A stretch of DNA of 43,870 bases, taken from Macrostomum lignano. Lineage: Eukaryota. Within the stretch, counting starts at the first letter, position 1. Each line of letters starts with the position of its first letter. Positions 4,903 to 43,870 of the stretch are shown here, in pieces. The stretch is taken from positions 1-43,870 of the forward strand of contig NIVC01002828.1 of the NCBI GenBank assembly GCA_002269645.1, read 5' to 3'. The position numbers and the translations under genes are program-made. The notes under the pieces are model-generated. The model made no database searches and was not told where the DNA came from. It worked only from the letters and a program-made list of their open reading frames with translations.

Positions 4903-5216
4903 CATGGAGGAAAGAATAGAATGGAGTGCTAATCTGAGCCAGTTATTTTTATCTCGCTCGATTTTCGCTTTTAACATCCCTTTCCCCCCGTTCCTTCCTA
5001 TTAACTGAAAGCATATTTTGATGCGAGCTCATACTATGCTGGGACAGACCTTTCAGAGGGGAACGAAAACGAAAACGAGACGAAAGATACTTTGTCTATG
5101 GCAGTCACGAGCCAATAGGAAAGAACGGGGGGGGGAAAGGGATGTTAAAAGTTAAGATCGAGCGAGATAAAAATAACTGGCTCAGATTAGCAATCCATTC
5201 TATTCTTTCCTCCATG
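4903..5216. mobile_element. Non-autonomous TIR element (P-element-like MITE), 314 bp
   Basis: About 95-bp inverted repeats starting CATGGAGGAAAGAATAG. Perfect 8-bp TSD GTCCCTCT at 4895-4902 and 5217-5224. CAT termini with an 8-bp TSD fit P (hAT not excluded). Confidence 0.8.
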
Positions 5217-6205
5217 GTCCCTCTTACTTTCCAACTGGAACCAGTGACAACCATTTCCAAAAACTTTTTACAATTACCATAGACAGCGACAGTTTAAGTA
5301 CAGTTTGATTGGTTCAAGAATAAAATAGTCTATGGTCGCAAGTGGGAGCCTCAATGAATTTCTCAGTGGTAGTGTGCTTCGGTATAAATGTCTATAGTAC
5401 AATACCAATAAAACAAGCATGCATCCATTAACAAGTCTATGGGCCAGAGCCTCGAGCTTGGCTCCCGCGTGCAGGCCGGTGGGTCGAGACGCAAGGAAAA
5501 TAATGCCTGAACTGAAGGAAGCAACGGCCAGAATGCATAGTTTTCGTTTAGCAAAGCAAAAGGCTAACGGCTGCTTCATTCGCCACTGGTAAGTTTAAAG
5601 CAATGTTGCTAGTATTAGCAATGAAATGTGAAAGTTTGTAAGCTAAGCTAAGCTAAACAAGGTGCTTCAACAAGTCAAGTGTAGGTTAGGTTCAAAAGTT
5701 AGGTTATTTGAAAAAATATTTTTTTCGAAAATCTTTTCGAAAGATTTCGAGAGTAACACGATTTTTCATGTTTTGTTATTCTGTTTTTATGGCAAACCGT
5801 AGATAAAAAGTTATGCCATTTTAAATCCTCATTTTTCAATCAATGTTTATTTGCACGGAAGGAAAATGAAAACTTTGAACAAAAATGTGGGCCTGGATAA
5901 AACTGGTTGATAGTGGCATGGTACGTTGCATTTGTGTATTTTTTATGCACAGGGTCGAATCAACTGTCATATACTCAGAAGGTTTCGCACAGTTGTCGCC
6001 AGACGATCTCCGCGTGCACGTAGCTCGAGGGGAAGGTCACATTTGCGTTTCGGAACGTCTCAATATTAGGCCGTATGAATAAAGTGAGCATTTGCATAAA
6101 CTCGACCGAATTCTCGATTCAGTATGAATAAAATGAGCACTTACTCACGAATAAATGCTCCAAGGTTTTTTCTATTAAGTTAATGGTCGACTGTTGAGTA
6201 TCTAC

Positions 6206-6297
6206 CATGGAGGAAAGAATAGGATGGAGTGCTAATCTGAGCCAGTTATTTTCTCGCTCGATCTTCACTTTTAGCATCCCTTCCCCCCCCCCGTTCT
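6206..6297 (+). mobile_element. Left terminus of a second copy of the CATGGAGG MITE family
   Basis: Near-identical to 4903-4998. Confidence 0.7.
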
Positions 6298-6630
6298 TCA
6301 TGATGTCAGTCTTTGCTTTGAGTTGACCCTTGATACACTCGTATTTTCCAGCTTCTTAAAGATATTCTTGGCGTAGGACTGCTTCCCTGCCTTGCTTAAA
6401 TCATCTTGGATTGCCACTACGGCTTTGTTCTTCTCTTCTACTACGCAAAGGGTCTTCCCCTTATCCAGCAAACAGGGATGCTTTACGACAAAACTTACAA
6501 AGCACTTGCTTGGACTCAGAGTAATTGCTCAGCTTTGAGCTGTTACTCCTGAGTTTTTGCTCATTTTATTCATACGGGCTCATAAGGATAGCCTTCAAAA
6601 ATGGCAGAATTCATGCCCGGAAGGGCCCAG

Positions 6631-7423
6631 GGGGTGTTTCATAGACCGCTTGTCAGAGTTACAAGTGCGACAAGTGAGCAGTAAGTAGCGGTTTCCGTTT
6701 CATAGAATTACAAGTGACAAGTGACAAGTTCTGACAAGTGACAAGTGAGTAGTGACAATTGCTAGTTACAAGCGGTTTGTTTCATAGACATTGCTTCTTA
6801 AAGAGTGAGCAGCGTTTGATTTTCGACAAGCTTAAGTAGTCCCGCGAGATTTGTCAAACTTGTAGCTATCAGATTTCGCTTCGCATGGCAACATGTTCGA
6901 TTCTGATTCGGACTCTTTGGACGAAGCTATTGGCCACATTGCATTGGCAAAGAGACCAGAATGTTTAAACCACGAATAAACTTTCAATTTGAGGATCGAA
7001 TTGATTCAATTCCTTCGTAATTATAGAGGAAAACTCTCCAAACACGCCTTTCTCTCGTTAAGCAGACGGAGTATGGCGTTTTTGTTTTCAACCGTGAGAG
7101 GCATTCTTACGCTTGCTATAAGTGGGCCAAACGTGTAAGATAGACTCTATGCCAAAGATTAAATATAATAAATATTGATAAATATCGTCTTTCCTCTATA
7201 CAGAACTAGATCATATCCAGGGTCCAACGGGAGTCGGCTGTGGCTGCGCCTGGGACGGACTTGATGTTTGGCCCATAGATATTTAGTTCACTACTCAGTC
7301 AGCTTGTAACTTGTCACTGGATTTACTCATACTCGTACAAATCAGTCTATGACACAAAAATCTGTAGCACTTGTAATTTTTTAACTTGTCACTTGTGGCT
7401 TGTCAAATCAATGAAACACCCCC
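6631..7423 (+). mobile_element. Non-autonomous PIF/Harbinger derivative with a frameshifted transposase N-terminal stub
   Basis: TIRs GGGGTGTTTCAT / ATGAAACACCCC, flanked by CAG and CTG. ACAAG-rich subterminal repeats. Stub MFDSDSDSLDEA...RMFKPRINF near 6892-7000 resembles the start of the 19839 transposase. Confidence 0.7.
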
Positions 7424-7754
7424 CTGGGGAGTGTTTCATATAATTTACAAGTTACAAGCTACAAGCTACAAGTTTAATAGCTACAAGCTACAAGTTTAAT
7501 AGCTACAAGTTTAATAGCTACAAGTTTAATAGCTACAAGCTACAAGTTTAATAGCTACAAGTTTAATAGCTACAAGCTACAAGTTTAATAGCTACAAGTT
7601 TAATAGCTACAAGCTACAAGTTTAATAGCTACAAGTTTAATAGCTACAAGCTACAAGTTTAATAGCTACAAGTTTAATAGCTACAAGCTACAAGTTTAAT
7701 AGCTACAAGTTTAATAGCTACAAGCTACGAGCTACAAGCAAAAGTGTTACACAA
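7203..7754 (+). repeat. Direct repeat copy 1 (552 bp) of segment repeated at 11035-11512
   Basis: Runs GAACTAGATCATATCC...AAAGTGTTACACAA. Appears identical to copy 2 apart from minisatellite length. Confidence 0.9.
7445..7740. repeat. Minisatellite of AGCTACA and AGTTTAAT units (15/22-bp units, 37-bp higher-order period)
   Basis: 14 TTTAAT-containing units counted. Confidence 0.95.
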
Positions 7755-7765
7755 AGTCTTTTCGC

Positions 7766-10700
7766 CCCAGTGAGCTTTGGGGTTGGAATTTTATAATACC
7801 TAGTGTTGTATCGATTATTTAAAGACTTTCAAGGCATTATTAACGCTGATGCTCCTAATATTTTGCGTCGTGTCATACATAAAGTTAGCCTAATAGATAA
7901 AGTAGGGCGAGAGTTGTAAAATGTCTCTAACGTCAAATGATTTATAGGAAGGGAATTAGGGATGTCGATTCCCCAGGGAATTATCTTATCGGGGACCCCG
8001 GTGAAAAGAAAAAATAAGTTAAAACAGCGGATCACTTAGATTGTAAGTGGAATTTTTTAAACTTTGATTTTAGCTTTGTACTACATGTTCAAGGCGCAGG
8101 GGTAAAAATTTTAAACAATGTTTTTTTAAACTGTATTTGACAATGTGGCATCACGAAATCGTGCGCGCACCTTTATCGGAAAAGTGCATTTGTTGGAATG
8201 CATGCTAAACAGCTACGCTCGTGAGAGGATAATTAATGAATGAGACTGTTTTTATAATCGGAATTTTATTTCTTGCATATATATGTAAATCACCATTTTG
8301 TCCTTGTCTAATAGGGAGTATATGTATGACACCCCCCTATGCGTCAGTGCCTGACGCATGACGCAGCGCTGCGCCTGCGTCAAGCCGTCAACGCAGACCA
8401 ACACAGCAGTCACTAGTCAGTAAGGCTTCTTTTTCCTGACGGGTTTCTTTTCTACGTGCAATTTGCTTGATTGAATGACTTATTAGTGAAAAAACAATCA
8501 AACGTGTATTGTGTTTCAAATACATGTAATGCATTGAAATAAGCAATTATGCGGTAAAAGAGCATAGACAGAGTTTCAATCAGCTTTCTGTGAATCAGTT
8601 TCTTATTTTAATGGCAAAAATTAAGTTACAAATGCATTTTTTCATATTTTTTCTCCCCAGGGTCCCCGGTTAAATTCCCCGGAGAGTATTCCCCGACAAG
8701 CTCCCCGGGGAGCACTCCCGGGGTCAACATCCCTAGAAGGGAAACTACGAGCATAAGTTCTGCAACACATATACAAGTAGCTAAGCATTAATAGACGCAC
8801 TGCACCGATAAAATGTAATGGAATTGCTCGAATCACCGACACCAAGACCCATAAAACTGGAGAAACTGGCAGGATATAGTAGATACATGTAGGTCAGAAT
8901 CAGAAGTGATCATGGGTGGGTGGGTCAAGTGATCATGGGTTCGACCTCGATTGTATTATTCCTTCTTAATCTTATGCAATTAATTGTAAATTAGGTATGA
9001 TATGAAGTAACAGTAATTATCCTTGACCATGCTAGAGTAAAGACAAGTCAAAGTCAAGTTAATAAAAATAGACACACAGTGTAACAATAACAATGGTTTT
9101 TAGAGCCATTTTTCTTGTCTGTGTTTGTCTTTGTACATACATGTACATTTGGGAAGACTTATCTGGACCCAATCCCTTCTTATTCTACATGTACGCTGTT
9201 TTGGGTATGGGGGTTAGAGTTGGGCCGTCTGACACCCCCCTCCCCCCCCCCTACCATAGTGGACTGGAGAGAAAGAAGCACATGCTATCGCTATTGGCTA
9301 GCCTGTCGTTCTCTTTCTCTTTACCTTCTGTCTTGTGTAGCGTACACTATCCAATGCACAAGGCCCAACTTTCCACTAAAGGAAGGTTCATATAGTCCGC
9401 CCATGGGCTTCCTCTTGCTTTCGCGTACACTCAAGGCCACTCACTCTCAACACCAGCCACTAGAGGCTTGTTTTAAATAATCGATCGATAATATTAAATG
9501 TACACTTGAAAGCTTGCTTTGGATCCTAGCAGAAGGGGGAGAAAGTGGCCAAGGCCACCACACCCCACAAGGCAGGCAGGCCGGCCCGAGTGCGATAACG
9601 AATGACAAAAAAATAGAAAAGTACAATTTACACATCAACTTTCAATACAATAAATACAATAATAGGTGCGGTATTAATGACAGTGTATTTTCGCACAAAG
9701 TAGCTACGTTCAAACCACCAGCACGTAAACAGCTAAAATTTCACTGTTTATGAAATTTTATAAAATTTAACACATCATTTTAGATATTGAAAACTTTTAA
9801 AGGAGGGTATTACTGTTGCATGTGACTATAAAATCGTGGTAGGTATAGCTGATGATGAAACTGGTGATTGGTATCTAGCTTTTTTGATAACTTAGCCGGT
9901 TAGACCCCGAAATAGCTATTGTAATTTGTAACGCTGGAGCCAAATACAAATACAATGGAGCAATTAGTTTCTCTCAAATCTGTCTCTGCCAGTGCCAGTT
10001 TAGTCCATAGTAAGTAACCAAAGTAAAATACCCATTAGTGGTCCCGTTTCTAATGTTTATAAATATTAAGCTTCAGTTTACTTTTGGCACAGTATGCAAT
10101 TTTGAAAATTCACCCTAATAACGGTTTGCACCAGCAGGAAAGCAACTATTTTGTTGTTGGAAATCGGATTAAGCAGTCAAAAGAGTGTATTTCTATGAAA
10201 AAAGGTACTTTTTTTCCATTTTTTCAAATATTTAAACAGGTTTCGCTCTTTCAATAAAAAAATCATCGCAGTACCTTAAAGTACAGTTAGTTTGGAATTA
10301 GATGACGGCGTTGAATTGTTTCTTCCATATTCCAAAAATTATAATGAGCACTTTTCCTCAAATCAGTTTGAGATCATGATTTTTAGTCTTTCGTCGATAA
10401 CTTTCTGATTTCAAATGTTTAAGAATTGAAAACTTCCACACTTGTGTATCTTTGAATTGCGCATCAATTGGTGCATAGTATGTATGCTTAACTATTAGCA
10501 GTATAGAAAAAAATGCAAAAAACTGTAAAAGTACATTTTCAATTTTTGCATTTTTTGCAACCAAAGTGCCAACTTTTTGATACAATTGAAAAAAACAACC
10601 CAATAATGTTATGCATCTTAGTAAGGCGCACCTATAACCCTCGAACATTTTTAGCTCGAGTTTTAATGTGCATGAGGAAATGCACTTTTGTAAAGACATA

Positions 10701-11035
10701 ATCTTAAGACAAACATTTCAACTGAAGCCTGTTCCTTTTCTCCGCAGTGAATCCATACAAAACTATACTCGTTAAATAGATCAGATTCTTCTCTTTAAAA
10801 TGACACCTCACTTGTGAAATTCGCACTTGTAGTTTTGAAGTTACAGCAGTTTTTGTGAGATTTTTCTTGTCATTTTTTCGATGCACACGTCTCATATTAT
10901 TATATTCGTCACAAGCCAGACCACCCAATGCGCTTCGCGCATTGGCTGGCTGTTTGTTCCTCATGCTCGGCACTTTGTGCCTCGCGCGTTCGCTCCGCTC
11001 ACCCCACAAACCCAAGGGAACTAGAGCTCACTGGG
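7766..11035. mobile_element. Putative non-coding TIR element with CCCAG termini (CMC/EnSpm-like)
   Basis: Perfect 11-bp inverted repeat CCCAGTGAGCT (7766-7776) / AGCTCACTGGG (11025-11035). No matching 2-bp TSD and no transposase. Confidence 0.45.
7957..8735. mobile_element. hAT-like MITE
   Basis: TIRs TAGGGATGTCGA / TCAACATCCCTA. 8-bp GAAGGGAA at 7948-7955 (one extra T before the TIR) and at 8736-8743. CCCCGGG subterminal repeats. Confidence 0.7.
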
Positions 11036-11512
11036 AACTAGATCATATCCAGGGTCCAACGGGAGTCGGCTGTGGCTGCGCCTGGGACGGACTTGATGTT
11101 TGGCCCATAGATATTTAGTTCACTACTCAGTCAGCTTGTAACTTGTCACTGGATTTACTCATACTCGTACAAATCAGTCTATGACACAAAAATCTGTAGC
11201 ACTTGTAATTTTTTAACTTGTCACTTGTGGCTTGTCAAATCAATGAAACACCCCCCTGGGGAGTGTTTCATATAATTTACAAGTTACAAGCTACAAGCTA
11301 CAAGTTTAATAGCTACAAGCTACAAGTTTAATAGCTACAAGTTTAATAGCTACAAGTTTAATAGCTACAAGCTACAAGTTTAATAGCTACAAGTTTAATA
11401 GCTACAAGCTACAAGTTTAATAGCTACAAGTTTAATAGCTACAAGCTACAAGTTTAATAGCTACAAGTTTAATAGCTACAAGCTACGAGCTACAAGCAAA
11501 AGTGTTACACAA
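11035..11512 (+). repeat. Direct repeat copy 2 (478 bp), including a minisatellite at about 11279-11497
   Basis: 10 TTTAAT units, 74 bp (2 x 37) shorter than copy 1. Confidence 0.9.
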
Positions 11513-11832
11513 CACTGCTTGTAGATTTCAGCCAAGAATCGTACAAGTTTGACAAGCTTGTAACTATTCACTTCATCGTCTATGGTAAAAAACTTACCTC
11601 TTTGGGGTGGTAGAGAGAACGACTCGAAGCTAAAAACAAAACTCATTATCATATAGACTATCGTTTTTTAATGCATTTTTTAATGAAGCTGTTAAGTCAC
11701 GATAAATTGCCATAGATTATGAGCGAGAAATTCACTGTTTTTATTCATGTAAGCAACAAGAACTTTAACAGGAAACAGATCGAGGATATAGCAAAGCAAA
11801 CGAATACCAAAGTACGAGCTATATATTCTTTG

Positions 11833-12663
11833 TTAGAAGTTGAACGTGCACCCATCGAAGAGGCAGTTGGCAAACATCGGCTGTTGCACACTTCGCATGT
11901 CAACTTGAGCTTGCTGCATGACTGTTGCACTAGTGGTTGCACTCGTAGTCGCCTCGGTTGGTGGGGCCAAATTGTCACTAACAGCGGTAGCAACCTTCCT
12001 GAGGGTTCTGTCACGCTTGCGTGCGAGATAATGTCGAACAGTGGACTCCGATCGTTGTCCCGTTACCGCCATTATCTCACCCATAGGCATTCCTTTGTCG
12101 AAAAGATCCGCAATACGCGTGACGCGTATGCAGTGATTCGTGTACTGCTTGGAGGGGTTGCACACACTACTAACGTGCTTCATGAATGCCGCCAACCAAT
12201 TGACACCGCGCACTTGCGTAGCAGAGAAGCGAATTTGTCCTCCCGAATTGTTAGTCAGAGGGCGCGGAAAGAACGAGGACGAATTCTGCGGTAACAAACT
12301 CTGATAATGCAGGATCAACTCCCGCTGAGCGCCGTAGATCCGACTCTGTTTGCGCTGAGTTCCCTTGCATTTTGTTGGATCGCTACTCTGGTTTTTTGTC
12401 TTTATCGGCGGCAAAGCAAGATATGGATTCCCATCAGCGTCGACTTCTTCTTGGAGCGTGCCAACTTGCTTTAGACTTGACAGGTGTTCTTGACCTCTCT
12501 CGCCCAGGACATACAGCAGCGTAAATAGTACTTCATCTTGCAACCGTTCAACCGAACGGTCAAAATAAGCACGCATTTTCTGTAAATCACCTTCTTCTAT
12601 TGGCTCGTGCTGATTGACAGTGCCTCCATCAGCATGAAAATGCCGCACCTTTACTCGCAGCAT
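11833..12663 (-). CDS. Crypton (DUF3504-like) tyrosine recombinase, catalytic domain, 276 aa; N-terminus disrupted
   Basis: HEPIEEGDLQKM, RLQDEVLF, GERGQE (R), TNHCIR (HxxR), TGQRS (His position), RHY (Y), C-terminal FDGCTFNF. An upstream out-of-frame segment reads DISGL...QWTGL. Confidence 0.85.
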   Translation of the reverse strand: MLRVKVRHFHADGGTVNQHEPIEEGDLQKMRAYFDRSVERLQDEVLFTLLYVLGERGQEHLSSLKQVGTLQEEVDADGNPYLALPPIKTKNQSSDPTKCKGTQRKQSRIYGAQRELILHYQSLLPQNSSSFFPRPLTNNSGGQIRFSATQVRGVNWLAAFMKHVSSVCNPSKQYTNHCIRVTRIADLFDKGMPMGEIMAVTGQRSESTVRHYLARKRDRTLRKVATAVSDNLAPPTEATTSATTSATVMQQAQVDMRSVQQPMFANCLFDGCTFNF

Positions 12664-12825
12664 CTTACTGCTGTCTTACGCTCAGACCAGTCCACTGACT
12701 AACTTCTTCACCAGGATCACGATGTCCAAGTTGCTGCAGAAACGCAATCTCATTCATTTCTAAACCGCTAATATCTTTCTCTAGTATTGATTCCCAGTGA
12801 AACATGGCTAATTCCGAACCTTTAA

Positions 12826-20310: not shown

Positions 20311-20313
20311 CTG

Positions 20314-33352: not shown

Positions 33353-34070
33353 ATCTATGCTCGATATCTACACTTGCAGTCGAAAAAAACAGAAAGCTGG
33401 GGTGAAATGAAATGAAAGGATCGACAAAGCCTCTTTGGATGTAAACTGTACATGAAATTGAACATTCGTCTGTGGTTGAAATCGAATGTGTTTCGCTGAG
33501 TTTGAATGCAGATTGCCGAAATTGAGTGAAAAGTCTGCACGCGTCAATAAATTTACCCATAGACAAGCAGACAAGTTTGAGACAGAATTAAATTGAATGC
33601 AGATTGCCGAAATTGAATGTGGTTCGCTGAGATGGAATGCGAGCATCCTTAAATTGAATGAAGATTTGGTCGGCTAAATTTAGATTGCCGATTTTGAATG
33701 CCAACTTGCTGAAATTGAATGCGACTTTGGTTGAAATTGAATGCAAAAAGGTGTAGGACTTAGAGTCTGCACAAGTACTGCATTTGAAATACAGTTAAGG
33801 TGTAGTTGAATGCGTAGCACTTGTGCACGAAATATTATGTACATACTGTGCAATTGTTTCTGGATATGCGCTTTGTTCCTTCGCGCGCTATTGCTTGCTG
33901 ATAAGTGCACAGGTTTTTGCGTGTTCAAATACACCAAAATGCAGCACTTGTGCAGAATCTAAGAAATCCCTCTCTTCTGTCTTGATTCCCTTCTTAGATT
34001 GGCGCTGTCGAAATTGAGTGCAGTTTGCCGAAATTGAATGCAGTTTTATCAAAATAGAACACAATAAGGT

Positions 34071-35763: not shown

Positions 35764-35952
35764 TTAAGGCCTATAAGTTTTTTCTGCATGAGGCGTTTCC
35801 CGGATTCCCGCCCCCTTTTCTAGCTGTCCATGGGTTGTAAGCGATACTTTAGGCTTCGCCTGAAACCGTGCGTGCAGCCCTGCTTTGATCTCGACCAGAG
35901 TAATACTGGGATTTGCCTCAATCCTGTTCTCCATTGAGTCCCTAAGAACCAT
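35764..35952 (-). pseudogene. IS630/Tc1-like HTH fragment
   Basis: IEANPSITLVEIK...FQAKPKVS aligns with LEENPFLTLKEM...FPEKPQVS. Confidence 0.6.
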
Positions 35953-36962
35953 AGACTAAATAAAGAAGCTTGGAATTATAAAAAATATATTGTCAGCAGA
36001 TCAAATTGTCGTCTACATGACAGAACTCCAGTACAAACTGTCGATTCCTTTTTGCGGCCTAGTTGGTACTGTAAGCTTCAATTTAATCGCAGATACGGAA
36101 ATCAGACTTGCGAGACTGAAAATTTTCTGTCTATGGTCGACACTCGTTGGCATAGCGGAGCTCAATTTAATCCTGGGGGAATCAATTTGATCATTTTATG
36201 TATTCAATGCACATTTTTACTGTTATCGCAACTTGTTTTTAGCTTGTCTTTTACATCATATGATCCTCGGACAGACTATGACGGCAGTCAGGTTCCAGAC
36301 GTTCATCAATGATCTGGTGCAAAGCGTGAAGAGTCGTGATGTACCTGGATGGCGAGGAGTTAGTTCTGTGTGATCATTGATGGAGCCCGTTTTCATCATG
36401 GAGTGACAATCCCAGATCGATTTCAGCCCGCTTGGCGCCTCGTGACATTGCCTCCTTACTCGTCGTTCCTCAATCCTGTGGAGAACGCGCACACCTGCCT
36501 GAAGGCAGCCATCAAATCACATTGCTAGAAGAGCTCGACACTCCGCCTGATGGTCATTCGCTACGAGAGTGGCGAATCTTTGTCCTACATAGGTTTGCAG
36601 AGGACGCAACCCTTGAAGGGACCGTTGCAAAATGCGGAGGATGGTACCGGCAGATGCTGAGGTTTATTCCAGCCTTCATCGCCAGACAGCCAGTCATCTA
36701 AACTTTTTTGACTCGACGACATCCAGCGCCAAAGCGTTTATTTGTTTATTGTGTAGTTCTGTTTTCAGTTTTTGTCAACGATAAGTAAGCGAATTTTGTT
36801 TCAACACAGGATATCTAACGTTATATGATTAGAATGATCAAATTGATGCCCCCAGGATTAAATTGAACTCTGCTATGCCAACGAGTGTCGACCATAGACA
36901 AAAAATTTTCAGTCTCGCAAGCCTGATTTCCGTATCTGCGATTAAATTGAAAGCTTGCAGTA

Positions 36963-38616
36963 TCGCTTTTGACGCTCTAGATAAGACTTTAGACATTCAA
37001 AATAAGACTGCATAGGATCGCAAGCAAGGCCAGGCTAGCCACGGCCAGAGCATGCCCAGTCTTGGCTGCAGGAATGGCTTGGCCATAGACTAAAAAATGG
37101 AATATCAAAATGAGAATAAGACGCTCAATATGAGACCGGGAGTGAACGTAATTTATTTGCTTTTTGGCAGTCACCATACAAACAGCTAAGGAGAAATTAG
37201 GCAATAAACAAGAAGCAGAATAGCATATCGAAATGTTTAGTCCCTCACTGAAGTCAGCCTGGCGGACTGCGTTAGAAGGCCATTCGATTTAAGCACCTGC
37301 CAAAGTGCCTCTGACAGCGGAGTTCCCATCTGGCCGCCTTCTCAGCTGTGATGACGAGGCCGACTGCCTCCCGTGCAATCCGCTCCAGCAGCATGAAGCG
37401 CCACTCCTCTTGTGTGAAATCTGCAGGTGGAGCAGCCTCTTCCTCGACTAGCTCAGGGTTCGCCAGCATCTGGCGAATGCGCGCCTTGAGTGCTGAGTTC
37501 GCGAGCTCCACAGGATTGAGGAAATGCGAGTATGGTGGCAGAATCCTGATGGAGATCTGGTTCTGGAGCTGCTGAGGGACCCTCGCCGCACGATGAAAAT
37601 TTGGCCCATCCATCAGGATGACCCATTGGGCTCCCTGGTCCAATTGGTTGCATCGCTCGCACAGGGCGTCCACAAACTCTTGGAAGCGAGCAACGGTTTG
37701 TCCACCGCGGTAGACATTCGAGTGCAGGAGACCAAACTCAGTCGCAATCGCCATGCACACCGAGACATTTGGCCCGCGTTGCGTTGTCACAGTTCGCCGA
37801 ATAGGACGGCCTTTCAGCGCACGACCCTGAGAGCGCCTGGTCCAGAGATTGAACCCGGTCTCGTCCAAGAAGACAGTGCGAGTCTCTTGAGCCAAATTCA
37901 GCATGAACATGGCGTATTCGTGCCTGGCTTCGATATTTGCCTCAGAATTTGTCCTCATCCTCACGTCAGTGCCTTTGACAGCCAGCTTCACGGTGTGTAG
38001 CAGACCGTGCAGCATTCGGTCCACGCACTTGTAGCTGACTTGCGGCTTTTCCGGAAACTGCGTAGCCAGACGTGAGGACATTTCCTTGAGTGTGAGGAAG
38101 GGATTTTCCTCCAGCGTCTCAGTCAGGAAGTCTCTCATCTCGTTGTCAGCCTTGCAATTTTCTTCTCTCCGACCGCCACGAGGTAGGGATTCAACTCTGC
38201 CATGGAGGCGGAACTCCGCAGCGATCCTAAAGGCGGACGCTCTCTTGATCTTGAAATTTGAGCGGCAGCTAGGATGGTTGATCCATTGTTTACTGCGTCG
38301 ATCAGACGCTGACGGTCTGCTGCAGGAATCGATGATGCCATCACAGTGAAATCCAAGGGGTCAGATGCAACCCAAGGGGTGAAGAAGGAGAGCTGGCTGA
38401 GGGTCAGAGGGTTAGAGCGATATCTGAAGGCTTTCACACTCAGTCTCATATTGAGCGTCTTATTCTCATTTTGATATTCCATTTTTTAGTCTATGGCCAA
38501 GCCATTCCTGCAGCCAAGACTGGGCATGCTCTGGCCGTGGCTAGCCTGGCCTTGCTTGCGATCCTATGCAGTCTTATTTTGAATGTCTAAAGTCTTATCT
38601 AGAGCGTCAAAAGCGA
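36963..38616 (-). mobile_element. Young IS630/Tc1-like element, 1654 bp, about 175-bp near-perfect TIRs
   Basis: TIR TCGCTTTTGACGCTCTAG. TA TSD at 36961-62 and 38617-18. The empty site is reconstructable from 35470-35490. Confidence 0.95.
37272..38341 (-). pseudogene. IS630/Tc1-like DD33E transposase, about 356 aa, one 1-bp frameshift near 38255
   Basis: N-terminal HTH, LPRGGRR linker, VFLDETGFN, ILMDGPNFH, LPPYSHFLNPVE. 33 residues between the second D and E. Confidence 0.9.
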
Positions 38617-38882
38617 TACCAACTAGGCCGCAAAAAGGACTATTCATCCAGCAAAACGCTGAAGACTTTAACGAACGTGTAAAACAAAACTATTGTAAAC
38701 AAGAGTAACGGAGGGAGGGAGTGTCTCTTTCAAGGGAGCCATTGCGGTTTAGTCATTTATGTCATCCGTCAGTGGCCTGAAAGCCTTAAGTCGTTGCTTG
38801 TTGCTTGTTGCAGATGGAGGTCACATCAAGACAAGATTTCTGTTCTGACGGCTGCTAAAGTCTGACTATAGAATCAATCAGA

Positions 38883-39165
38883 CTATTCACACGTATACGC
38901 GCATAAAACAGTCTTGATGAACGGCTTCGCTTCACCAGTTTTGTCTAAGATCTTCACGGGCGTTTTCACGCATCCTAAGATTTCGTTGATCTTGGAGTTG
39001 TCGTAGTTTGGTAGCGCCGATTCTGCCAGTCTTTGCAGATCTAATATCCGGATGGTTGAGACCTCTGCGGCAGTGTCTAGTAGTGCTGTGCATGTTCCAT
39101 TTTTTCCGGTATCGCCACAAGAACAGATGGTACACCATTTTACCCTCGCTTTTGAACAAACTCCG
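38883..39165 (-). pseudogene. Retropepsin-like aspartic protease remnant
   Basis: Frame not shown in the ORF track reads GTCTALLDTAAEVSTI, close to the ALLDTGAxVSxI signature. Confidence 0.55.
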
Positions 39166-39391
39166 TTTCACTTTAGACAGCCGGAACTTCAGTTTAGACA
39201 CTTTTAGACTGGAGCCCCGAATCTACATTCACTATCGACAAACTCCGTTTCAGTATCGACAGCTAAGCTTTGTGGTGCTACACTTCTATCTATTTATATA
39301 GGCAAGTAAGGAAACGCACATCCAAATCTAGGCGAAACTCCCTTTCACTTTCGATGAAGAGTTTAAGAGTGGTGATCAGTCACTCAAAAAC

Positions 39392-39407
39392 TCCCACTTC
39401 TAGACAC
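39392..39407 (-). other. Primer-binding-site-like sequence (tRNA-Leu type)
   Basis: Minus strand GTGTCTAGAAGTGGGA versus the recalled Gypsy Leu PBS TGGTGTCAGAAGTGGGAT, one inserted base. Confidence 0.5.
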
Positions 39408-39409
39408 GG

Positions 39410-40279
39410 GGGAACAAGTGCCTAGGTATTTATCTGTTCAAATAACTTACTTCAGCGGATCCTCTTGGGGTCGGCAGCCGGTGGAGTTCTGTGGCGCGTC
39501 GGGATAGCAAGCTTGCTGAGCGGTTACGGCGACCGGTTCCGGTGAACAACTGTTTTTCTTTGGTGTCCTTAACTTTATCTGTGGGTCGACCAAACGAGAG
39601 CGAATCAGAACTTCTTAACGGTCCTCGAGCTCGGAATTAACAGTAGAACGTGCGCCCTAATGAACAATCGAATTCTCTAAGTTTCTGTGATAGGTCCTCC
39701 TGAAGGGCGTCTTCTTCGTTACGTCCGAAACGTAACGGATAACTCAAATCAAATCAATAATCCTCTAGGAATATATCCTAGGAAACAAGGAGGCCTTTCT
39801 CAAATGTGTCGACAATAAACGGCTCTCGTAAACTCAATAATTCAACTTACTATCACTAACAATCAAAGAAATGAATCCGGTAAACGCTTACCAATTGTAC
39901 AAGTGTGGTCCCTCAGAGATTGGTCTTCTTCTTTGTTCCTTCAGAGTCTTCTTAGAGACCGCTCTGAGTCTGAATTTTTGACTTGAATTTTCACTTATAT
40001 TTATAGCAAAATTTTGGAGAAAAACCGGTTTGGGATTGGGTATTTACTTAGGTCAAAAATGTTTGATTAAGCGGTCATGCATGTTTGAGCATTACCATAT
40101 ATGGAGTTAAACAAATACAGCTGTTGAAATCCGGTTCCTTGATCAAACAATGTAGGGTTCTAAATCATTCTGTTTGCGCGTGATTCCTAAAATAGATATG
40201 ACTCATTTTGAAAGAAATTGACTTCCTTAGAATATTACTTTAAGTAGAGCATTACGGTATGGTCTAATAACTCTCTACA
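39410..40279 (-). repeat. LTR of a Ty3/Gypsy-type element (left boundary approximate)
   Basis: Begins TGT just after the PPT. Contains promoter motifs and a splice donor. PBS-like site follows. No clean terminal CA seen. Confidence 0.7.
39998..40205 (-). promoter_or_regulatory. LTR U3 promoter: AP-1 site, CArG box, TATA box
   Basis: TGACTCA at 40199-40205, CCATATATGG at 40095-40104, TATAAATA (minus) at 39998-40005, in the expected order for minus-strand transcription. Confidence 0.55.
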
Positions 40280-40282
40280 ATA

Positions 40283-40313
40283 TCTCCCCTTTTCACGAAA
40301 AATTCGTCCCGAA
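40283..40313 (-). other. Polypurine tract
   Basis: Minus strand TTCGGGACGAATTTTTCGTGAAAAGGGGAGATAT-TGT, the usual Gypsy pre-LTR configuration. Confidence 0.8.
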
Positions 40314-40472
40314 TTTTAAAGTTAAAGCGGTGAAGTGGGGTTTTATCTTCTAATAAACATGAAAATGTATTTAAGGATTAGAAATTTTGAACCAGTAGTA
40401 GTATAGTAGATGGATAGGTAGATAGGTAGGTCACATTGTTATTGTGTTGCTTGGCAGGATGCATTGTTATTG

Positions 40473-41072
40473 TTAATAGGAAAGCGTATTATTCAGTATA
40501 TCGTTTACTTTGGTTGTCAATCTCGCGAGTGGCCACAGTAAGTGCTGTATCGGCGTAAATTGTGTTGATTCGGTGGCGTTGAGGAATTCCAGGTAGATCT
40601 CTTCAGTTGTACTCGTAGTATTTATTGGATGCGCCGCATATTGACGTACCAAGTCAAAAAGATATTCCAAATGGTCTCTCTTGTTGAATGGTATTGGCCA
40701 GGTTCGTATAGCTGTTGCTAGTTCCTTGGCCGTCATACTGTCCATGGTCTCCTTTGTAAGTTGGATCTTTGGTAATGTTGTTGTTCCGGCGTAAATTTCC
40801 TTAGATATTGGCGCTGCACAAGTTATGCAATGCTTATAGTCGCGGCACCGAATTTTTAGAGCACAATCTCGGCAGACCCAGTGTCCGTTGGCGCACATCC
40901 TTTGTTGCGGTGTTGTATTGCATACCTGGCACAGGGTAGGTGGTGCGCGGCATAGCGGGCATTTGTCTATTCTATCCGTTGTGCAGCAGTTATAGCAGAA
41001 CTTATGCCCATGCTGACAGTAGACATACTGTTCAGTGTCTTCATAACAAACAATGCACTCGTCGCTATCCAT
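40473..41072 (-). CDS. Double RING-finger protein 2, 199 aa, putative E3 ubiquitin ligase
   Basis: C6-C9-C19-H23-C26-C29-C38-C41 and C48-C51-C60-H64-C67-C70-C82-C85. Intact ATG to TAA. Confidence 0.85.
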   Translation of the reverse strand: MDSDECIVCYEDTEQYVYCQHGHKFCYNCCTTDRIDKCPLCRAPPTLCQVCNTTPQQRMCANGHWVCRDCALKIRCRDYKHCITCAAPISKEIYAGTTTLPKIQLTKETMDSMTAKELATAIRTWPIPFNKRDHLEYLFDLVRQYAAHPINTTSTTEEIYLEFLNATESTQFTPIQHLLWPLARLTTKVNDILNNTLSY

Positions 41073-41144
41073 GTCTGAAAATGGTCAATTTGATAAGTAA
41101 TATCTGTGCAAGAATGGTTGCAATATCTGTGGGTGCATGGTATT

Positions 41145-41795
41145 TTAATCAATTTCTGAAGCGGAACTATTATAGTCATATGATTCTTGGGGTGGTAATA
41201 TATAAGACAAGTCCTCATTACGCAGAATGAGTGCAGGTAGAGCTGTACAGAGGATGGGGCATGGGTGAAAATTCATATCGTTAACAATTTTAAACAGCTT
41301 ATGTTCAATTTCTTGTGGAGATAATTGCCGGAGTCTAGAACCGTAGGAAGAGGAATAGCGAACGAGGTATTTACGTGTTTTATGAGCAGCACGTGGTATG
41401 GGCCATGATCTGAGGCGGATAATTATAGCATGTGATGGAAAAAGAGCATAAGTGAATGGGTGAAGCTGTAGGTTGTAGTCCGCTTGAATGCATGCAAGTT
41501 TGTTGTTAACTTTAGGTAAAGGGGTGGCATCGCATATAGGACACTGACAAATGGAGCGATAAGCAAGCTTCTTAATACATTGTGTGCACATAAAATGTTG
41601 ATTTAAGCAATATTGTTCAGTGCGCCAGGAGTTGCATATCATGCATTGACGGAGATTACCTCGACACATAGGGCAATTTTTTAAAGGTTTTTTGTAATGT
41701 GCAAGGCTTAAGCAAGAACCACACACCTGGTGTCTATTGACACATATACAAGGTAGTTTACATGAAAATTCTCCGAGACAGATAGGACAATCCAT
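41145..41795 (-). CDS. Double RING-finger protein 1, 216 aa, putative E3 ubiquitin ligase
   Basis: C3-C6-C18-H22-C25-C28-C41-C44 and C51-C54-C63-H67-C70-C73-C85-C88. Intact ATG to TAA. Confidence 0.85.
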   Translation of the reverse strand: MDCPICLGEFSCKLPCICVNRHQVCGSCLSLAHYKKPLKNCPMCRGNLRQCMICNSWRTEQYCLNQHFMCTQCIKKLAYRSICQCPICDATPLPKVNNKLACIQADYNLQLHPFTYALFPSHAIIIRLRSWPIPRAAHKTRKYLVRYSSSYGSRLRQLSPQEIEHKLFKIVNDMNFHPCPILCTALPALILRNEDLSYILPPQESYDYNSSASEID

Positions 41796-41926
41796 TGTCG
41801 TGTTTGTCGTAGTTGTGTGAGCGTTTGTAGGAAAACAAGGATTTAGTCGCCTCTTACGACAAGCTTGAGGAAGCTGTAGTGCTATTCTTTATCCCGGTCA
41901 CTACACGGGGACATGAAGCGAATAAT

Positions 41927-43708
41927 TTAACGAGGTCTTAGGTTGTACGTATGACCGACAGGTGGTGCGTTTGTTGTTTGTGTTTCGGCGTGTGCAGTGG
42001 CAATGTGTTTATTTGTTGTTTTTGTGTGGTCTGGATTTTGTAGGTCTGGGAGGAATGTAGTGTCGTTAGTGATACGTTTTAGACGTTGAATGTGAACATA
42101 GAACTGAGGTTGATGTGGATCCTGGATATTAGCGAGGCGTGCTGATACTAGAGAAGGCTTAGGTAGGTCTCGCTTATGTCGTTCTATGACATCTTTTCTC
42201 TGATAGGTTCCATTTACTACCTTCAGGAAAACATTCTTATCCATATCCTTAAGCGCGATTGGTATTTCTTGGTCGGAGAGGATTAGTTGCTCGTCCTTGT
42301 TTTTACATTTCAAGTGTGTGTAGCTTGGTTGCTTTGGAAATGTAAGAGCCAAATCTCCTGAGTCGGCAAGGAAGGTGTTAGATAGCAGTTTCCCTTGAAC
42401 AGTGTGATATTTTTGCAGCTTGCAGTCAATTTCAGTTTTTACTTCCCATGCAGTGAAATATTTGCGGGTTCGGCTGGGCTCCTCATATCGGGAATCCGAT
42501 CTATATTCAATTTGGTATCGATAGTCATGGAAATAAATCGGTGCTAGGGGTAAATTTTGAGCTTCTTCTTTGTTGTAGTTAGGGGTAGAACAATATCCAG
42601 AGCTGTAGTGACACTGGTCGAGTGGTAGCTGTAAGGATTCCATGTTGTCAAATGGATTGTGGTAGAATAAAACATTTCGGATGAGGTAGCTATTGTAGAC
42701 TGAGTATGTAGGCCATCGTGATTGATGATAATGGACATATCTTCCATCGGCTACATTTTTTGTGCGAAATAGCTGTGCTCCGCTGGCGGACGTCTCATGA
42801 AGTTTTAATTGACCATCTTCGGAAAACAGAGTTTGATTCCACCGAAGGCATTCTTCTTGTGATACCATCATCGAAGTTTGCCAATACCTGATTCGGTTCC
42901 ATTGTACCAGCCAAACCTTTTCAATTTCATCCTTGTCTCGGAAGCACACAATTCCCATTTGTCGATGCTTCTTTGTATTTGCTTTGTATATTTCAATAGT
43001 TAGTGGTAGTGGCTTGGTTTGGTTTGTCTTAAAGTAACTGCATTTGATTTCCGTAGGAATCTTGTAAATGACTGGCTGGATGTCTCCATCAGTGGGACAG
43101 ATCATTGGAGATGGAGACGGCAGTACCGTGGGAACAATTGCCATCATCAAGATCGTGAGGAAGCATTGCAGTAGCGGATGTTTTTTCTTTCGTCTTGTTG
43201 GTACTGGTGGAGTGTCTTCAATCTCGTCATGACTATCTTCAGGATACGGCGGAGGAGTAAGGCGAGTCGAAAAGTGCCATTTGTTGGAACATGGTAATGG
43301 TGTGGGTGGCTGCGATTGCAACATCGGACGCATAAAGTTGGTTGATTTTGATATATTGGTAAGATGTGTAGTTGTATTCTCATCAGTTGGAGTGTTAACC
43401 GGTTCCATTATTGTTATCGGTTCATCATATTCGCTTTCATAGTCTAGGTTCATTGAAACATATGTGTCATCCTCCGTCTGTACGAACTTTTCATCTGTCG
43501 AATGGTTAGATTGTGTGTTCGTGGCCTTGTCATGTTTCCATTTTTCGTGGACTGGACTAGGGGAGACAATATTTTCATAGTCTGGTTCCTGTGTTGGAGG
43601 TGTTTCTGACAGGTCTATATCGTCGACTAGGACCTGCAACATGTCAACGCTTTCTTCAAAGATGTTTTGAGAAGTTGCTGGATCTCTGTCTTCTTCAAGT
43701 GTTGTCAT
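41927..43708 (-). CDS. env-like glycoprotein of an LTR retroelement, 593 aa, no C-terminal transmembrane anchor
   Basis: Acidic P/T-rich N-terminus, RRKKK plus hydrophobic segment (aa 179-196), Cys-containing ectodomain starting PMICPT...YKIP...C, furin-type RHKR and RLKR, terminal HTYNLRPR. Lies upstream of the PPT/LTR. Confidence 0.7.
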   Translation of the reverse strand: MTTLEEDRDPATSQNIFEESVDMLQVLVDDIDLSETPPTQEPDYENIVSPSPVHEKWKHDKATNTQSNHSTDEKFVQTEDDTYVSMNLDYESEYDEPITIMEPVNTPTDENTTTHLTNISKSTNFMRPMLQSQPPTPLPCSNKWHFSTRLTPPPYPEDSHDEIEDTPPVPTRRKKKHPLLQCFLTILMMAIVPTVLPSPSPMICPTDGDIQPVIYKIPTEIKCSYFKTNQTKPLPLTIEIYKANTKKHRQMGIVCFRDKDEIEKVWLVQWNRIRYWQTSMMVSQEECLRWNQTLFSEDGQLKLHETSASGAQLFRTKNVADGRYVHYHQSRWPTYSVYNSYLIRNVLFYHNPFDNMESLQLPLDQCHYSSGYCSTPNYNKEEAQNLPLAPIYFHDYRYQIEYRSDSRYEEPSRTRKYFTAWEVKTEIDCKLQKYHTVQGKLLSNTFLADSGDLALTFPKQPSYTHLKCKNKDEQLILSDQEIPIALKDMDKNVFLKVVNGTYQRKDVIERHKRDLPKPSLVSARLANIQDPHQPQFYVHIQRLKRITNDTTFLPDLQNPDHTKTTNKHIATAHAETQTTNAPPVGHTYNLRPR

Positions 43709-43870
43709 TTCTTTACGATCCTGGAAATTGTCATCTCGGTGAGTTTCCGAAAGATTGTCGATCGTCGGAACTTTAAATAGATTGCTTTGTTGCTTAGAAA
43801 TAGTTTGTTGTTGTCTTTTGTTTTCTCGGAGACTGGACTTGCTTTAGAAGAGGTAGGAATGGGTGGATCT

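What the first reader, a model, noticed from the sequence alone, without database searches (positions are those of the whole stretch)
4903..43870. Transposon ORFs are almost all antisense to the upstream gene: candidate uni-strand piRNA cluster
Seen: of 17 single-polarity coding remnants (4 Crypton, piggyBac, mariner, 4 Gypsy pieces, 7 IS630-like), 16 are on the minus strand. Only element B is plus, and the Harbinger stub at 6.9 kb would be a second plus case. A two-sided binomial gives about 3e-4, though the copies are not fully independent. Convergent Harbingers are neutral. Known: Drosophila flamenco is a nest of antisense-oriented transposon fragments just downstream of a gene. Inference: plus-strand transcription from or past the DNAI3 3' end would make a silencing precursor covering at least five superfamilies.
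Basis: partly seen in the sequence, partly recalled or inferred. Interest (0 to 1): 0.78.

Follow-up and report, generated by a model that had tools for sequence, protein, structure and literature searches.

The report
Strand-skewed transposon nest in a flatworm
Downstream of the cilia gene DNAI3 in the flatworm Macrostomum lignano lies a 39-kb pile of transposons nested in one another; most point the same way, but the skew is much weaker than claimed and nothing here shows the locus makes silencing small RNAs.

Summary
The window is from Macrostomum lignano. DNAI3/WDR63 ends at 4530 (+) and a transposon nest fills about 77% of 4903-43870. The minus-strand excess is real. A symmetric Pfam scan of both strands finds only Harbinger transposases and one IS630-like copy (B) on plus. 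The "16 of 17" counts pieces, not insertions. The Gypsy pieces are probably one gB-type-envelope errantivirus. It seems to be split by a 13.3-kb array of IS630-like elements nested at each other's ends. One IS630-like transposase is split by a nested Harbinger. I find three Crypton-like loci, not four. That gives about 12 minus to 1 plus (two-sided p = 0.0034). The excluded Harbingers run the other way: 4 of 5 have the transposase on plus. Counting them gives 13:5 (p = 0.096). Treating the IS630 array as one event gives p from 0.016 to 0.39. No small-RNA, transcript or control-window evidence could be obtained. The plus strand is not depleted of AATAAA. Unlike flamenco, the locus is mostly DNA transposons. 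My best reading is an ordinary nested transposon graveyard with a chance or non-independent skew (0.5). A uni-strand piRNA cluster remains possible (about 0.25); such clusters are already reported in this species.

The parts
1..4530 (+). 3' part of TEX47 (1-214), then the DNAI3/WDR63 gene; stop codon at 4528-4530
   Evidence: The exons are 100% identical to M. lignano BOX15_Mlig003582g2, and the next hits are DNAI3/WDR63 of many animals. The locus is NIVC01000301.1 of GCA_002269645.1. The stop codon was read.
4903..5216 (.). Inverted pair of a short non-coding repeat; further copies at 6198-6289 and 21392-21571
   Evidence: Self-blastn and inverted repeat I7, 87 nt at 95%; peptide-level matches.
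6627..7426 (+). H0: internally deleted Harbinger carrying the 5' stub of the transposase
   Evidence: TIR motif CCAGGGGGTGTTTCAT at 6627 (+) and 7411-7426 (-). The N-terminal transposase-like reading was made. Positions 6626-6786 match 20199-20043 inverted.
7755..11277 (.). 3.5-kb segment absent from assembly GCA_002269645.1, bounded by the 455-bp direct repeat 7203-7657 / 11035-11489, which includes a 37-bp tandem array
   Evidence: Alignment of L001 to the window, self-blastn, tandem repeats. No TE domain was found in it.
11748..12853 (-). Crypton-like tyrosine-recombinase remnant 1
   Evidence: Weak Phage_integrase match, E = 0.01, at the HxxR...Y region. Homologous to loci 2 and 3. No PDB match.
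12840..15421 (-). piggyBac, nearly intact, with one frame break near 14.5-14.66 kb
   Evidence: DDE_Tnp_1_7 E = 2.5e-54 plus zf-Tnp_2. Palindromic subterminal repeats lie at 12840-12958 and 15235-15421.
15505..17262 (+). H1: Harbinger with the transposase on plus (15611-16216) and a Myb-like remnant on minus (16702-16857)
   Evidence: DDE_Tnp_4 E = 7e-26; weak Myb_DNA-bind_4; 23-nt TIRs at 96% (I7).
17263..20198 (-). H2: Harbinger with Myb-like on plus (17519-18271) and the transposase on minus (18807-19989); the left end is not defined
   Evidence: DDE_Tnp_4 and HTH_Tnp_4; right TIR at 20183-20198; homology to H1 and H3.
20310..21208 (+). H4: deleted Harbinger keeping only a Myb-like piece on minus (20568-20831), so the transposase side would be on plus; a 121-bp Harbinger MITE lies next to it at 20194-20314
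   Evidence: TIR motifs at 20194, 20299-20314, 20310 and 21193-21208. The Myb-like piece matches 17519-17946.
22179..23214 (-). Mariner remnant
   Evidence: SETMAR E = 1.3e-6 and Mos1 E = 2e-5; 29-nt TIRs at 90% (I5).
23506..24376 (-). Crypton-like remnant 2, broken into several frames
   Evidence: Homology to Crypton-like 1 and 3.
24402..25226 (-). Ty3/Gypsy reverse-transcriptase fragment; no RNase H or integrase follows
   Evidence: RVT_1 E = 1.7e-26. Its homologues are RT-RNaseH proteins, one of which is named as a 17.6-like Pol. It is the only RT locus in the window.
25339..25804 (-). IS630-like DDE fragment
   Evidence: tblastn with the 29.4-kb copy gives 46-50% identity.
26379..27101 (-). 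Internally deleted IS630-like element that keeps the N-terminal HTH
   Evidence: 195-nt TIRs at 90% (I5); HTH_28 at 26711-26863.
27073..33836 (-). Large IS630-like element with 262-nt TIRs; it hosts two nested insertions
   Evidence: TIRs at 98% (I2). The inner TIR parts 29108-29197 and 33496-33584 pair (I13, I19). The transposase is split: aa 36-110 at 32685-32891 and aa 106-287 at 29464-30018. DDE_3 hit.
27787..28742 (-). Crypton-like remnant 3, nested in the left TIR of the large IS630-like element (inserted interval about 27335-29107)
   Evidence: Phage_integrase E = 0.0038; homology to loci 1 and 2; interruption of the TIR.
30020..32696 (+). H3: Harbinger nested in the IS630-like transposase gene; transposase on plus (30267-31373), Myb protein on minus (31673-32392)
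   Evidence: DDE_Tnp_4 E = 3e-29; Myb_DNA-bind_5 E = 5.6e-16; 18-nt TIRs at 94%, exactly at the break in the host ORF.
34071..35495 (-). IS630-like element C
   Evidence: DDE_3 E = 2.8e-14; TIRs (I10); tblastn.
35842..35946 (-). Short IS630-like fragment at the centre of the C/B palindrome
   Evidence: tblastn match to aa 75-109 of element A, E = 0.001.
36049..36962 (+). IS630-like element B, a deleted mirror-image copy of C and the only non-Harbinger remnant on plus
   Evidence: DDE_3 on plus; inverted repeats with C at 91-97%.
36960..38619 (-). IS630-like element A, nearly intact (362-aa open frame, one N-terminal frame break), flanked by TA and inserted at the right end of B
   Evidence: DDE_3 E = 1.9e-22 plus HTH_32; 187-nt TIRs at 98% (I4); junction sequences; 96.5% DNA identity to an independent contig, L002.
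38886..43870 (-). 5' part of a GAG-ENV-POL-type Ty3/Gypsy errantivirus; it runs off the window. Components: PR-like remnant 38886-39167, RING-finger ORFs 40473-41072 and 41145-41795, gB-type ENV ORF 41927-43708
   Evidence: The ENV homologues sit upstream of PR-RT-RH-IN in long polyproteins. The same polyproteins also hit the RT at 24.4-25.1 kb. The AF2 model matches herpesvirus gB, E about 1e-9. RING match. The PR match is weak. GC skew is +0.21.

Best explanation
The region is a nested transposon graveyard in the gene-poor stretch downstream of DNAI3 in Macrostomum lignano.

An old gB-envelope Ty3/Gypsy errantivirus on the minus strand was probably broken between its protease and reverse transcriptase. 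The breaking sequence is an array of IS630-like elements that inserted, one after another, at TA sites in or next to each other's terminal repeats. Crypton-like and Harbinger elements then landed inside those. Further piggyBac, mariner, Crypton-like and Harbinger insertions accumulated towards the gene.

The excess of minus-strand coding remnants is real. I think it most likely reflects a modest number of partly non-independent insertion events plus a post hoc choice of what to count, rather than selection for a function.

Shown: the anatomy, the nesting and the strand of each remnant. Inferred: that the RT and the ENV block are one element, and that the skew has no function.
For: Organism and locus.

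Strand map: a symmetric scan puts only Harbinger DDE and element B on plus.

Non-independence:
- An IS630-like ORF is split by a Harbinger whose TIRs sit exactly at the break.
- A Crypton-like remnant sits inside a TIR.
- Element A, flanked by TA, sits at the end of B.
- C and B form a palindrome.
- ENV, a weak PR match and the RT are collinear once 25339-38619 is removed.

Statistics (for 12:1 and 13:5; the other two are my own arithmetic): p = 0.0034 for 12:1, 0.096 for 13:5 with Harbingers counted by transposase strand, and 0.016-0.39 if the IS630 array counts once.

Harbingers are skewed the other way, 4:1. The plus strand is not depleted of AATAAA: 30 observed against about 16 expected.

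Against: If Harbingers are set aside, 12 of 13 insertions share the minus strand. Setting them aside is defensible, because their two genes converge, so either orientation puts one gene antisense. These insertions come from five superfamilies. They range from degraded copies (Crypton-like, mariner, RT) to nearly intact ones (piggyBac, element A). A skew that persists across ages and families is what selection on orientation would give. By length the skew is 19.9 kb against 0.9 kb. No mechanism is known to me that would orient nested IS630-like insertions, so treating the array as one event is a conservative assumption, not a demonstrated fact.
Confidence: 0.5

Rival explanations
1. Uni-strand piRNA cluster. 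A promoter near or beyond the 3' end of DNAI3 drives a long plus-strand precursor. PIWI proteins process it into piRNAs antisense to piggyBac, mariner, Crypton-like, IS630-like and errantivirus mRNAs. Insertions in the antisense orientation are retained because they confer silencing.
For: 12 of 13 non-Harbinger insertions are on minus, across ages and superfamilies. The nest is fragmented and nested, as clusters are. M. lignano has 436 clusters, some unidirectional and up to 93.7 kb long, and Macpiwi1 piRNAs are mostly antisense to transposons (PMC4604429). The nest holds an envelope-carrying errantivirus on minus, the class of element that flamenco controls. GenBank's lack of genes here is uninformative, because repeat-overlapping and non-coding transcripts were filtered out of the annotation.
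Against: There are no small-RNA or transcript data. Clusters cover 0.63% of a genome that is more than half repeats. The skew weakens to 13:5 if Harbingers are counted. There are 30 AATAAA hexamers on the proposed precursor strand. The content is mostly DNA transposons, unlike flam-like clusters, which are defined by single-strand Gypsy-family content. From my own knowledge: DNAI3 read-through would probably occur in ciliated somatic cells rather than in PIWI-expressing neoblasts or germline.
Confidence: 0.25
2. The nest lies inside an ordinary plus-strand transcription unit, such as a long 3' UTR, read-through from DNAI3, an unannotated non-coding RNA, or an intron of a downstream-ending gene. 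Sense-oriented insertions, which bring their own polyadenylation and splice signals, were removed by selection, as with antisense-biased transposons in introns. No piRNA role is needed.
For: The strand skew is the same as above. The annotation used for GenBank dropped non-coding and repeat-overlapping transcripts, so an unannotated transcript is possible. ATTAAA is rarer on plus than on minus, 16 against 41.
Against: Average M. lignano genes are 7.5-9.4 kb with 1.1-1.4 kb introns, so a unit of 39 kb or more would be exceptional. DNAI3 ends in a normal stop codon at 4530 and no further exons were seen. AATAAA is not depleted on plus. From my own knowledge: orientation selection in introns is usually weak for DNA transposons.
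Confidence: 0.12
3. Mechanistic orientation bias. Incoming IS630-like elements are tethered by transposase bound to resident terminal repeats and insert next to them in a preferred relative orientation, building a head-to-tail array. The remaining same-strand elements are chance.
For: Seven IS630-like loci from at least three subfamilies are packed into 25.3-38.6 kb. They sit end to end or inside each other's TIRs at TA sites. Six of the seven have the same polarity.
Against: I know of no such orientation rule for Tc1/IS630-type elements. C and B are mirror images, which breaks the rule. It does not explain the piggyBac, mariner and Crypton-like polarity.
Confidence: 0.08

Closest known systems
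Drosophila flamenco and flam-like unistrand piRNA clusters (PMC10643416; FlaHMM, PMC11400887)
   Same: A transposon-dense stretch starts just downstream of a protein-coding gene. Most polar insertions lie on one strand, opposite to that gene. It includes an envelope-carrying Ty3/Gypsy element in that orientation.
   Different: Flam-like clusters are recognised by Gypsy-family content on one strand over tens to hundreds of kb. Here Gypsy-type sequence is about 6 kb of 39 kb, probably one element, and the bulk is DNA transposons. piRNA output, promoter, precursor and synteny are all untested. Only 39 kb is visible.
Macrostomum lignano piRNA clusters (Zhou et al. 2015, PMC4604429)
   Same: Same species. 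Those clusters are 1-94 kb transposon aggregates, some unidirectional.
   Different: They are defined by uniquely mapping 28-32-nt reads on the ML2 draft. Their coordinates could not be mapped to this window, so membership is unknown. If this locus is one of the 436, the finding is already known.
Nested transposon graveyards (transposons inserted into transposons in gene-poor DNA; from my own knowledge)
   Same: There is hierarchical nesting: errantivirus, then the IS630-like array, then Crypton-like and Harbinger. Degraded and nearly intact copies are mixed, and no host genes are present.
   Different: Such nests are not expected to show a strand skew. Here 12 of 13 non-Harbinger insertions agree.
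Antisense bias of transposons inside host transcription units (from my own knowledge)
   Same: Insertions are oriented opposite to the neighbouring gene's strand.
   Different: There is no evidence that the region is transcribed as part of a gene, and it would be far longer than typical M. lignano introns or genes.
GAG-ENV-POL errantiviruses of Platyhelminthes with HSV gB-type envelope (PMC13524379)
   Same: For the 38.9-43.9 kb block: the ENV has a herpesvirus gB-like fold. Its homologues sit upstream of PR-RT-RH-IN in Ty3/Gypsy polyproteins, which is the arrangement reported for flatworms.
   Different: The copy is incomplete. GAG and the 5' LTR lie beyond the window. POL is interrupted and truncated after the RT. 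Two RING-finger ORFs lie between ENV and PR, and I did not find these in the homologues.

Membership tests
flamenco-like unistrand piRNA cluster | piRNAs map almost only to one genomic strand | not testable with these tools
   No small-RNA data were available. The supplement of PMC4604429 lists clusters on another assembly, without sequence.
flamenco-like unistrand piRNA cluster | A long single-stranded precursor transcribed from a discrete promoter | not testable with these tools
   No RNA-seq or CAGE data. The GenBank annotation excludes repeat-overlapping and non-coding transcripts. There are 30 AATAAA hexamers on plus.
flamenco-like unistrand piRNA cluster | Content dominated by Gypsy-family (errantivirus) insertions on one strand | tested here: not met
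   There is one RVT_1 fragment plus one ENV-PR block, probably a single element of about 6 kb. The rest is piggyBac, mariner, IS630-like, Harbinger and Crypton-like.
flamenco-like unistrand piRNA cluster | Most insertions are antisense to the direction of cluster transcription | tested here: inconclusive
   12 minus to 1 plus without Harbingers (p = 0.0034); 13:5 with them (p = 0.096). The direction of transcription is unknown.
M. lignano piRNA cluster as defined by Zhou et al. 2015 | At least 10 uniquely mapping 28-32-nt reads per 1-kb window, with such windows merged | not testable with these tools
   The definition was read.
Ty3/Gypsy errantivirus, GAG-ENV-POL type | Class III (gB-type) envelope protein | tested here: met
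   The AF2 model (core pLDDT 70-97) matches EBV, HCMV and HSV gB with E about 1e-9 and probability 1.00.
Ty3/Gypsy errantivirus, GAG-ENV-POL type | ENV lies upstream of PR-RT-RH-IN on the same strand | tested here: inconclusive
   This order is seen in the homologous polyproteins. In the window, ENV, a weak PR-like match and the RT are collinear on minus, but they are separated by the 13.3-kb IS630-like array, and RH and IN are missing.
Ty3/Gypsy errantivirus, GAG-ENV-POL type | Long terminal repeats and GAG | tested here: not met
   There is no direct repeat flanking the element in the window and no gag domain. The 5' end lies beyond 43870.
IS630/Tc1-like DNA transposon | DDE_3 transposase with an N-terminal HTH, terminal inverted repeats, TA target duplication | tested here: met
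   Element A has DDE_3 E = 1.9e-22 plus HTH_32, 187-nt TIRs at 98% and TA on both sides.
PIF/Harbinger DNA transposon | DDE_Tnp_4 transposase, a second Myb/SANT-like gene, and short TIRs | tested here: met
   H3 has DDE_Tnp_4 E = 3e-29, Myb_DNA-bind_5 E = 5.6e-16 and 18-nt TIRs. The TIR motif occurs 9 times against 0.27 expected.
Crypton (tyrosine-recombinase transposon) | Tyrosine-recombinase catalytic domain (R-H-R-Y) and no terminal repeats | tested here: inconclusive
   Only weak Phage_integrase matches over the HxxR...Y region, E = 0.01 and 0.0038. No PDB match. The three loci are homologous to each other. The element ends are not defined.

The most novel reading that the evidence does not exclude
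A flatworm counterpart of flamenco: a uni-strand piRNA source next to DNAI3 whose plus-strand precursor is antisense to five superfamilies of DNA transposons and to a gB-envelope errantivirus. This would show that selection for antisense capture of transposons in a single-strand cluster operates outside arthropods and on DNA transposons.
Probability: 0.22. Interest if true: 0.55.

Novelty: new member of a known kind. Interest (0 to 1): 0.3.

Why it matters
If the locus were shown to make plus-strand piRNAs, it would be a compact, fully dissected example of an orientation-selected uni-strand cluster in a spiralian. It would be built mainly of DNA transposons and would sit next to a named gene. 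That would help test whether the flamenco logic is general. As it stands, the main value is cautionary. Counting coding fragments instead of insertion events, and leaving out the one superfamily that points the other way, turned a borderline skew into an apparent p of 3e-4. The anatomy is useful for annotating this genome: the nesting order, the IS630-like array, and a gB-envelope errantivirus with open ENV and RING reading frames.

Tried and rejected
1. Control windows from the same genome could not be obtained.
- Exact look-ups of window ORFs found nothing.
- The IS630-like A transposase has relatives only on contigs under 2 kb from other samples.
- The GenBank annotation of M. lignano leaves out repeat-overlapping genes.
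- Only one 22.5-kb locus of that assembly was retrievable.

2. Packing stop-free segments into roughly 900-aa pseudo-proteins for Pfam lost at least one clear hit: the RING finger, E = 7.6e-8 when scanned alone. I therefore repeated the scan segment by segment on both strands. The strand picture did not change.

3. A fourth Crypton-like locus was sought with relaxed tblastn and not found.

4. More Gypsy domains (RNase H, integrase, gag) were sought with 120 RT-RNaseH homologues and with Pfam. None was found.

5. The supplement of Zhou et al. 2015 was checked for a cluster near WDR63. The cluster table is not usable without the ML2 assembly.

6. Rfam and tRNA scans of the window were empty.

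7. I considered using strand composition as a sign of transcription and rejected it, because the A-rich sense strands of the transposons themselves explain the T>A excess on plus.

Full report
**Origin and setting.** The plus-strand exons at 0.7-4.5 kb are 100% identical to Macrostomum lignano protein BOX15_Mlig003582g2. The next matches are DNAI3/WDR63 of many animals. The gene lies on NIVC01000301.1 of assembly GCA_002269645.1, preceded by Translin and TEX47. That assembly matches window 588-7754 at 99.0% and 11278-18293 at 99.8%. It lacks window 7755-11277, a 3.5-kb segment bounded by a 455-bp direct repeat. DNAI3 stops at 4528-4530.

**Method for the strand map.** I translated all six frames and cut them at stop codons. 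I first scanned all segments of at least 50 aa against Pfam, packed into pseudo-proteins (decoded). Packing lost at least one clear hit: a RING finger with E = 7.6e-8 when scanned alone. I therefore rescanned every segment of at least 52 aa on its own, 131 on plus and 137 on minus.
- Plus strand: the only transposon domains are Harbinger DDE_Tnp_4 (three segments) and one DDE_3 (element B).
- Minus strand: DDE_3 (three segments), piggyBac (two), Harbinger DDE (two), Myb/SANT (two), several HTH domains, weak Phage_integrase (two) and one RVT_1.
- Families without good Pfam models were checked by all-against-all comparison of segments on both strands. No plus-strand copy of the Crypton-like, mariner or piggyBac sequences exists.

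**What the pieces are.**
- piggyBac (12840-15421, minus) is nearly intact: E = 2.5e-54, subterminal repeats.
- Mariner (22179-23214, minus) matches SETMAR and Mos1 and has 29-nt terminal inverted repeats (TIRs).
- Three mutually homologous loci on minus (11.75-12.85, 23.5-24.4 and 27.8-28.7 kb) have the HxxR...Y end of a tyrosine recombinase. They give only weak Phage_integrase scores and no PDB match. "Crypton-like" is reasonable but not proven. I find three loci, not four.
- The RT at 24402-25157 is Ty3/Gypsy-type. It is the only RT locus. No RNase H, integrase, gag or protease domain is detected anywhere.

**The right end of the window.**
- The 593-aa ORF at 41927-43708 (minus) has no Pfam hit.
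- A full HMMER search found 25 relatives. Several of them sit inside polyproteins of 2,000-3,000 aa, upstream of protease, RT, RNase H and integrase.
- An AlphaFold model built on their alignment (core pLDDT 70-97) matches herpesvirus glycoprotein B chains with E about 1e-9 and probability 1.00.
- This is the arrangement recently described for flatworm errantiviruses: GAG-ENV-POL with an HSV gB-type envelope (PMC13524379).
- The same polyproteins (P0249, P0259, P0267) hit both 43.2-42.2 kb and the RT at 25.1-24.4 kb, on the same strand and in the right order.
- A weak protease-start match lies at 39.0-39.14 kb.
- If the block 25339-38619 is removed, the protease-to-RT spacing is about 0.6 kb, against about 0.75 kb in P0249.

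My estimate is about 65%; the protease link is weak.

**The block that splits it is an array of IS630-like elements.**
- A fragment lies at 25339-25804.
- A deleted copy with 195-nt TIRs lies at 26379-27101.
- A large copy with 262-nt TIRs (98%) lies at 27073-33836.
- Element C lies at 34071-35495.
- A short fragment lies at 35842-35946.
- Element B lies at 36049-36962. It is on plus and is a mirror image of C at 91-97% identity.
- Element A lies at 36960-38619. It has 187-nt TIRs (98%), is nearly intact and is flanked by TA exactly at the end of B.
- The large copy holds two nested insertions. A Crypton-like remnant sits in its left TIR. Harbinger H3 has 18-nt TIRs (30020-30037 and 32679-32696) exactly where the IS630-like transposase is broken: aa 36-110 at 32685-32891 and aa 106-287 at 29464-30018.

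**Harbingers.** A TIR motif search gave 9 hits against 0.27 expected. Together with the domain hits it defines five polar Harbingers:
- H0, 6627-7426: transposase stub on plus.
- H1, 15505-17262: transposase on plus, Myb on minus.
- H2, about 17.3-20.2 kb: Myb on plus, transposase on minus.
- H4, 20310-21208: Myb on minus only, so the transposase side is plus.
- H3: transposase on plus, Myb on minus.

By transposase strand they are 4 plus to 1 minus, the opposite of everything else. That is defensible for a silencing argument, but it is a choice made after seeing the data.

**Statistics.** The p-values for 12:1, 13:5 and 16/17 come; those for 7:0 and 8:4 are my own arithmetic.
- Independent non-Harbinger events: three Crypton-like, piggyBac, mariner, one errantivirus and six IS630-like on minus, against B on plus. 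That is 12:1, two-sided p = 0.0034.
- With Harbingers counted by transposase strand: 13:5, p = 0.096.
- If the IS630 array is treated as one event: 7:0 (p = 0.016), or 8:4 with Harbingers (p = 0.39).
- By length, 19.9 kb of non-Harbinger polar sequence is minus and 0.9 kb is plus.

The skew is real but its significance depends on the counting rule. It was also noticed post hoc in one window.

**The piRNA-cluster idea.**
- M. lignano has PIWI proteins and 436 mapped clusters (median 9.7 kb, maximum 93.7 kb). Both unidirectional and bidirectional clusters occur, and Macpiwi1 piRNAs are mostly antisense to transposons (PMC4604429). The idea is biologically reasonable, and it would not be a new kind of thing in this species.
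- Those clusters cover 0.63% of a genome that is more than half repeats, so the prior for any one nest is of the order of 1%.
- A rough likelihood comparison (my own arithmetic, assuming 85% antisense in a true cluster) favours the cluster about 175-fold for 12:1 but only about 2-fold for 13:5.
- I could obtain no small-RNA data, no transcript data and no control windows.
- The lack of annotated genes downstream is uninformative, because the GenBank annotation dropped non-coding and repeat-overlapping transcripts.
- The plus strand carries 30 AATAAA (about 16 expected) and 16 ATTAAA. The minus strand carries 24 and 41. This shows no clear clearing of polyadenylation signals from the supposed precursor strand.
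- Flam-like clusters are recognised by Gypsy-family content on one strand (PMC11400887). Here Gypsy-type sequence is a minority, so that feature is not met.
- From my own knowledge: DNAI3 is an axonemal dynein gene of ciliated cells, so read-through from it would probably be in the wrong cells. A cluster would need its own promoter.

**Verdict.**
- An ordinary nested transposon graveyard with a chance or non-independent strand skew is the most likely reading (0.5).
- A uni-strand piRNA cluster is a live alternative (about 0.25).
- Selection within some other plus-strand transcription unit: about 0.12.
- A mechanistic orientation bias of nested IS630-like insertions: about 0.08.

The decisive tests are simple: map the existing small-RNA libraries and stranded RNA-seq to this locus, and compute the genome-wide distribution of strand imbalance on event-level transposon annotation.

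Noticed in passing
window 41927-43708 (-): An open 593-aa ORF encodes a herpesvirus-gB-type class III fusion protein (AF2 plus Foldseek, E about 1e-9). It belongs to a GAG-ENV-POL-type Ty3/Gypsy errantivirus of the kind recently reported in flatworms. The ORF is still open although the downstream POL appears destroyed.
   Followed up: yes
window 40473-41072 and 41145-41795 (-): Two open, paralogous RING-finger ORFs (24% identical) lie between ENV and the protease-like remnant. I found no counterpart in the homologous polyproteins. They could be accessory genes of the element or captured host genes.
   Followed up: partly
window 39900-43870: Strong strand asymmetry (GC skew about +0.21 and AT skew about -0.1 on plus) coincides with the errantivirus block, whose sense strand is rich in A and C.
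   Followed up: no
window 7755-11277 (repeats 7203-7657 and 11035-11489): A 3.5-kb segment is present here but absent from assembly GCA_002269645.1. It is bounded by a 455-bp direct repeat (99.8%) that contains a Harbinger end and a 37-bp tandem array. This may be a structural polymorphism or an assembly collapse. Its content has no recognisable domain.
   Followed up: partly
window 25339-38619: Seven IS630-like loci from at least three subfamilies are packed end to end or inside each other's terminal repeats at TA sites. This suggests preferential insertion next to resident copies.
   Followed up: partly
window 34071-36962: Elements C and B, with about 20 nt of flank, form a large palindrome (91-97% identity) around about 35770. 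This is either an inverted duplication or two mirror-image insertions.
   Followed up: partly
window 36960-38619; L002 1-1559: IS630-like element A is 96.5% identical over 1524 bp to a contig of the ENA metagenome assembly ERZ27309178, which encodes an intact 399-aa transposase. The family may be recently active. The window copy has one N-terminal frame break.
   Followed up: partly
window 6627-7426, 15505-17262, 20310-21208, 30020-32696 versus 17263-20198: Four of five Harbingers have the transposase on plus and the Myb gene on minus, the reverse of the skew of the other superfamilies.
   Followed up: yes
window 4903-5216, 6198-6289, 21392-21571: A short non-coding repeat family (about 90-100 bp, with a G/C homopolymer run) is present in four copies, two of them as an inverted pair directly after the DNAI3 3' end.
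   Followed up: no
versus 25 (method): Concatenating segments with X spacers into roughly 900-aa queries made hmmscan drop a RING-finger hit that scores E = 7.6e-8 on its own. Packed scans under-report cysteine-rich or short domains.
   Followed up: yes
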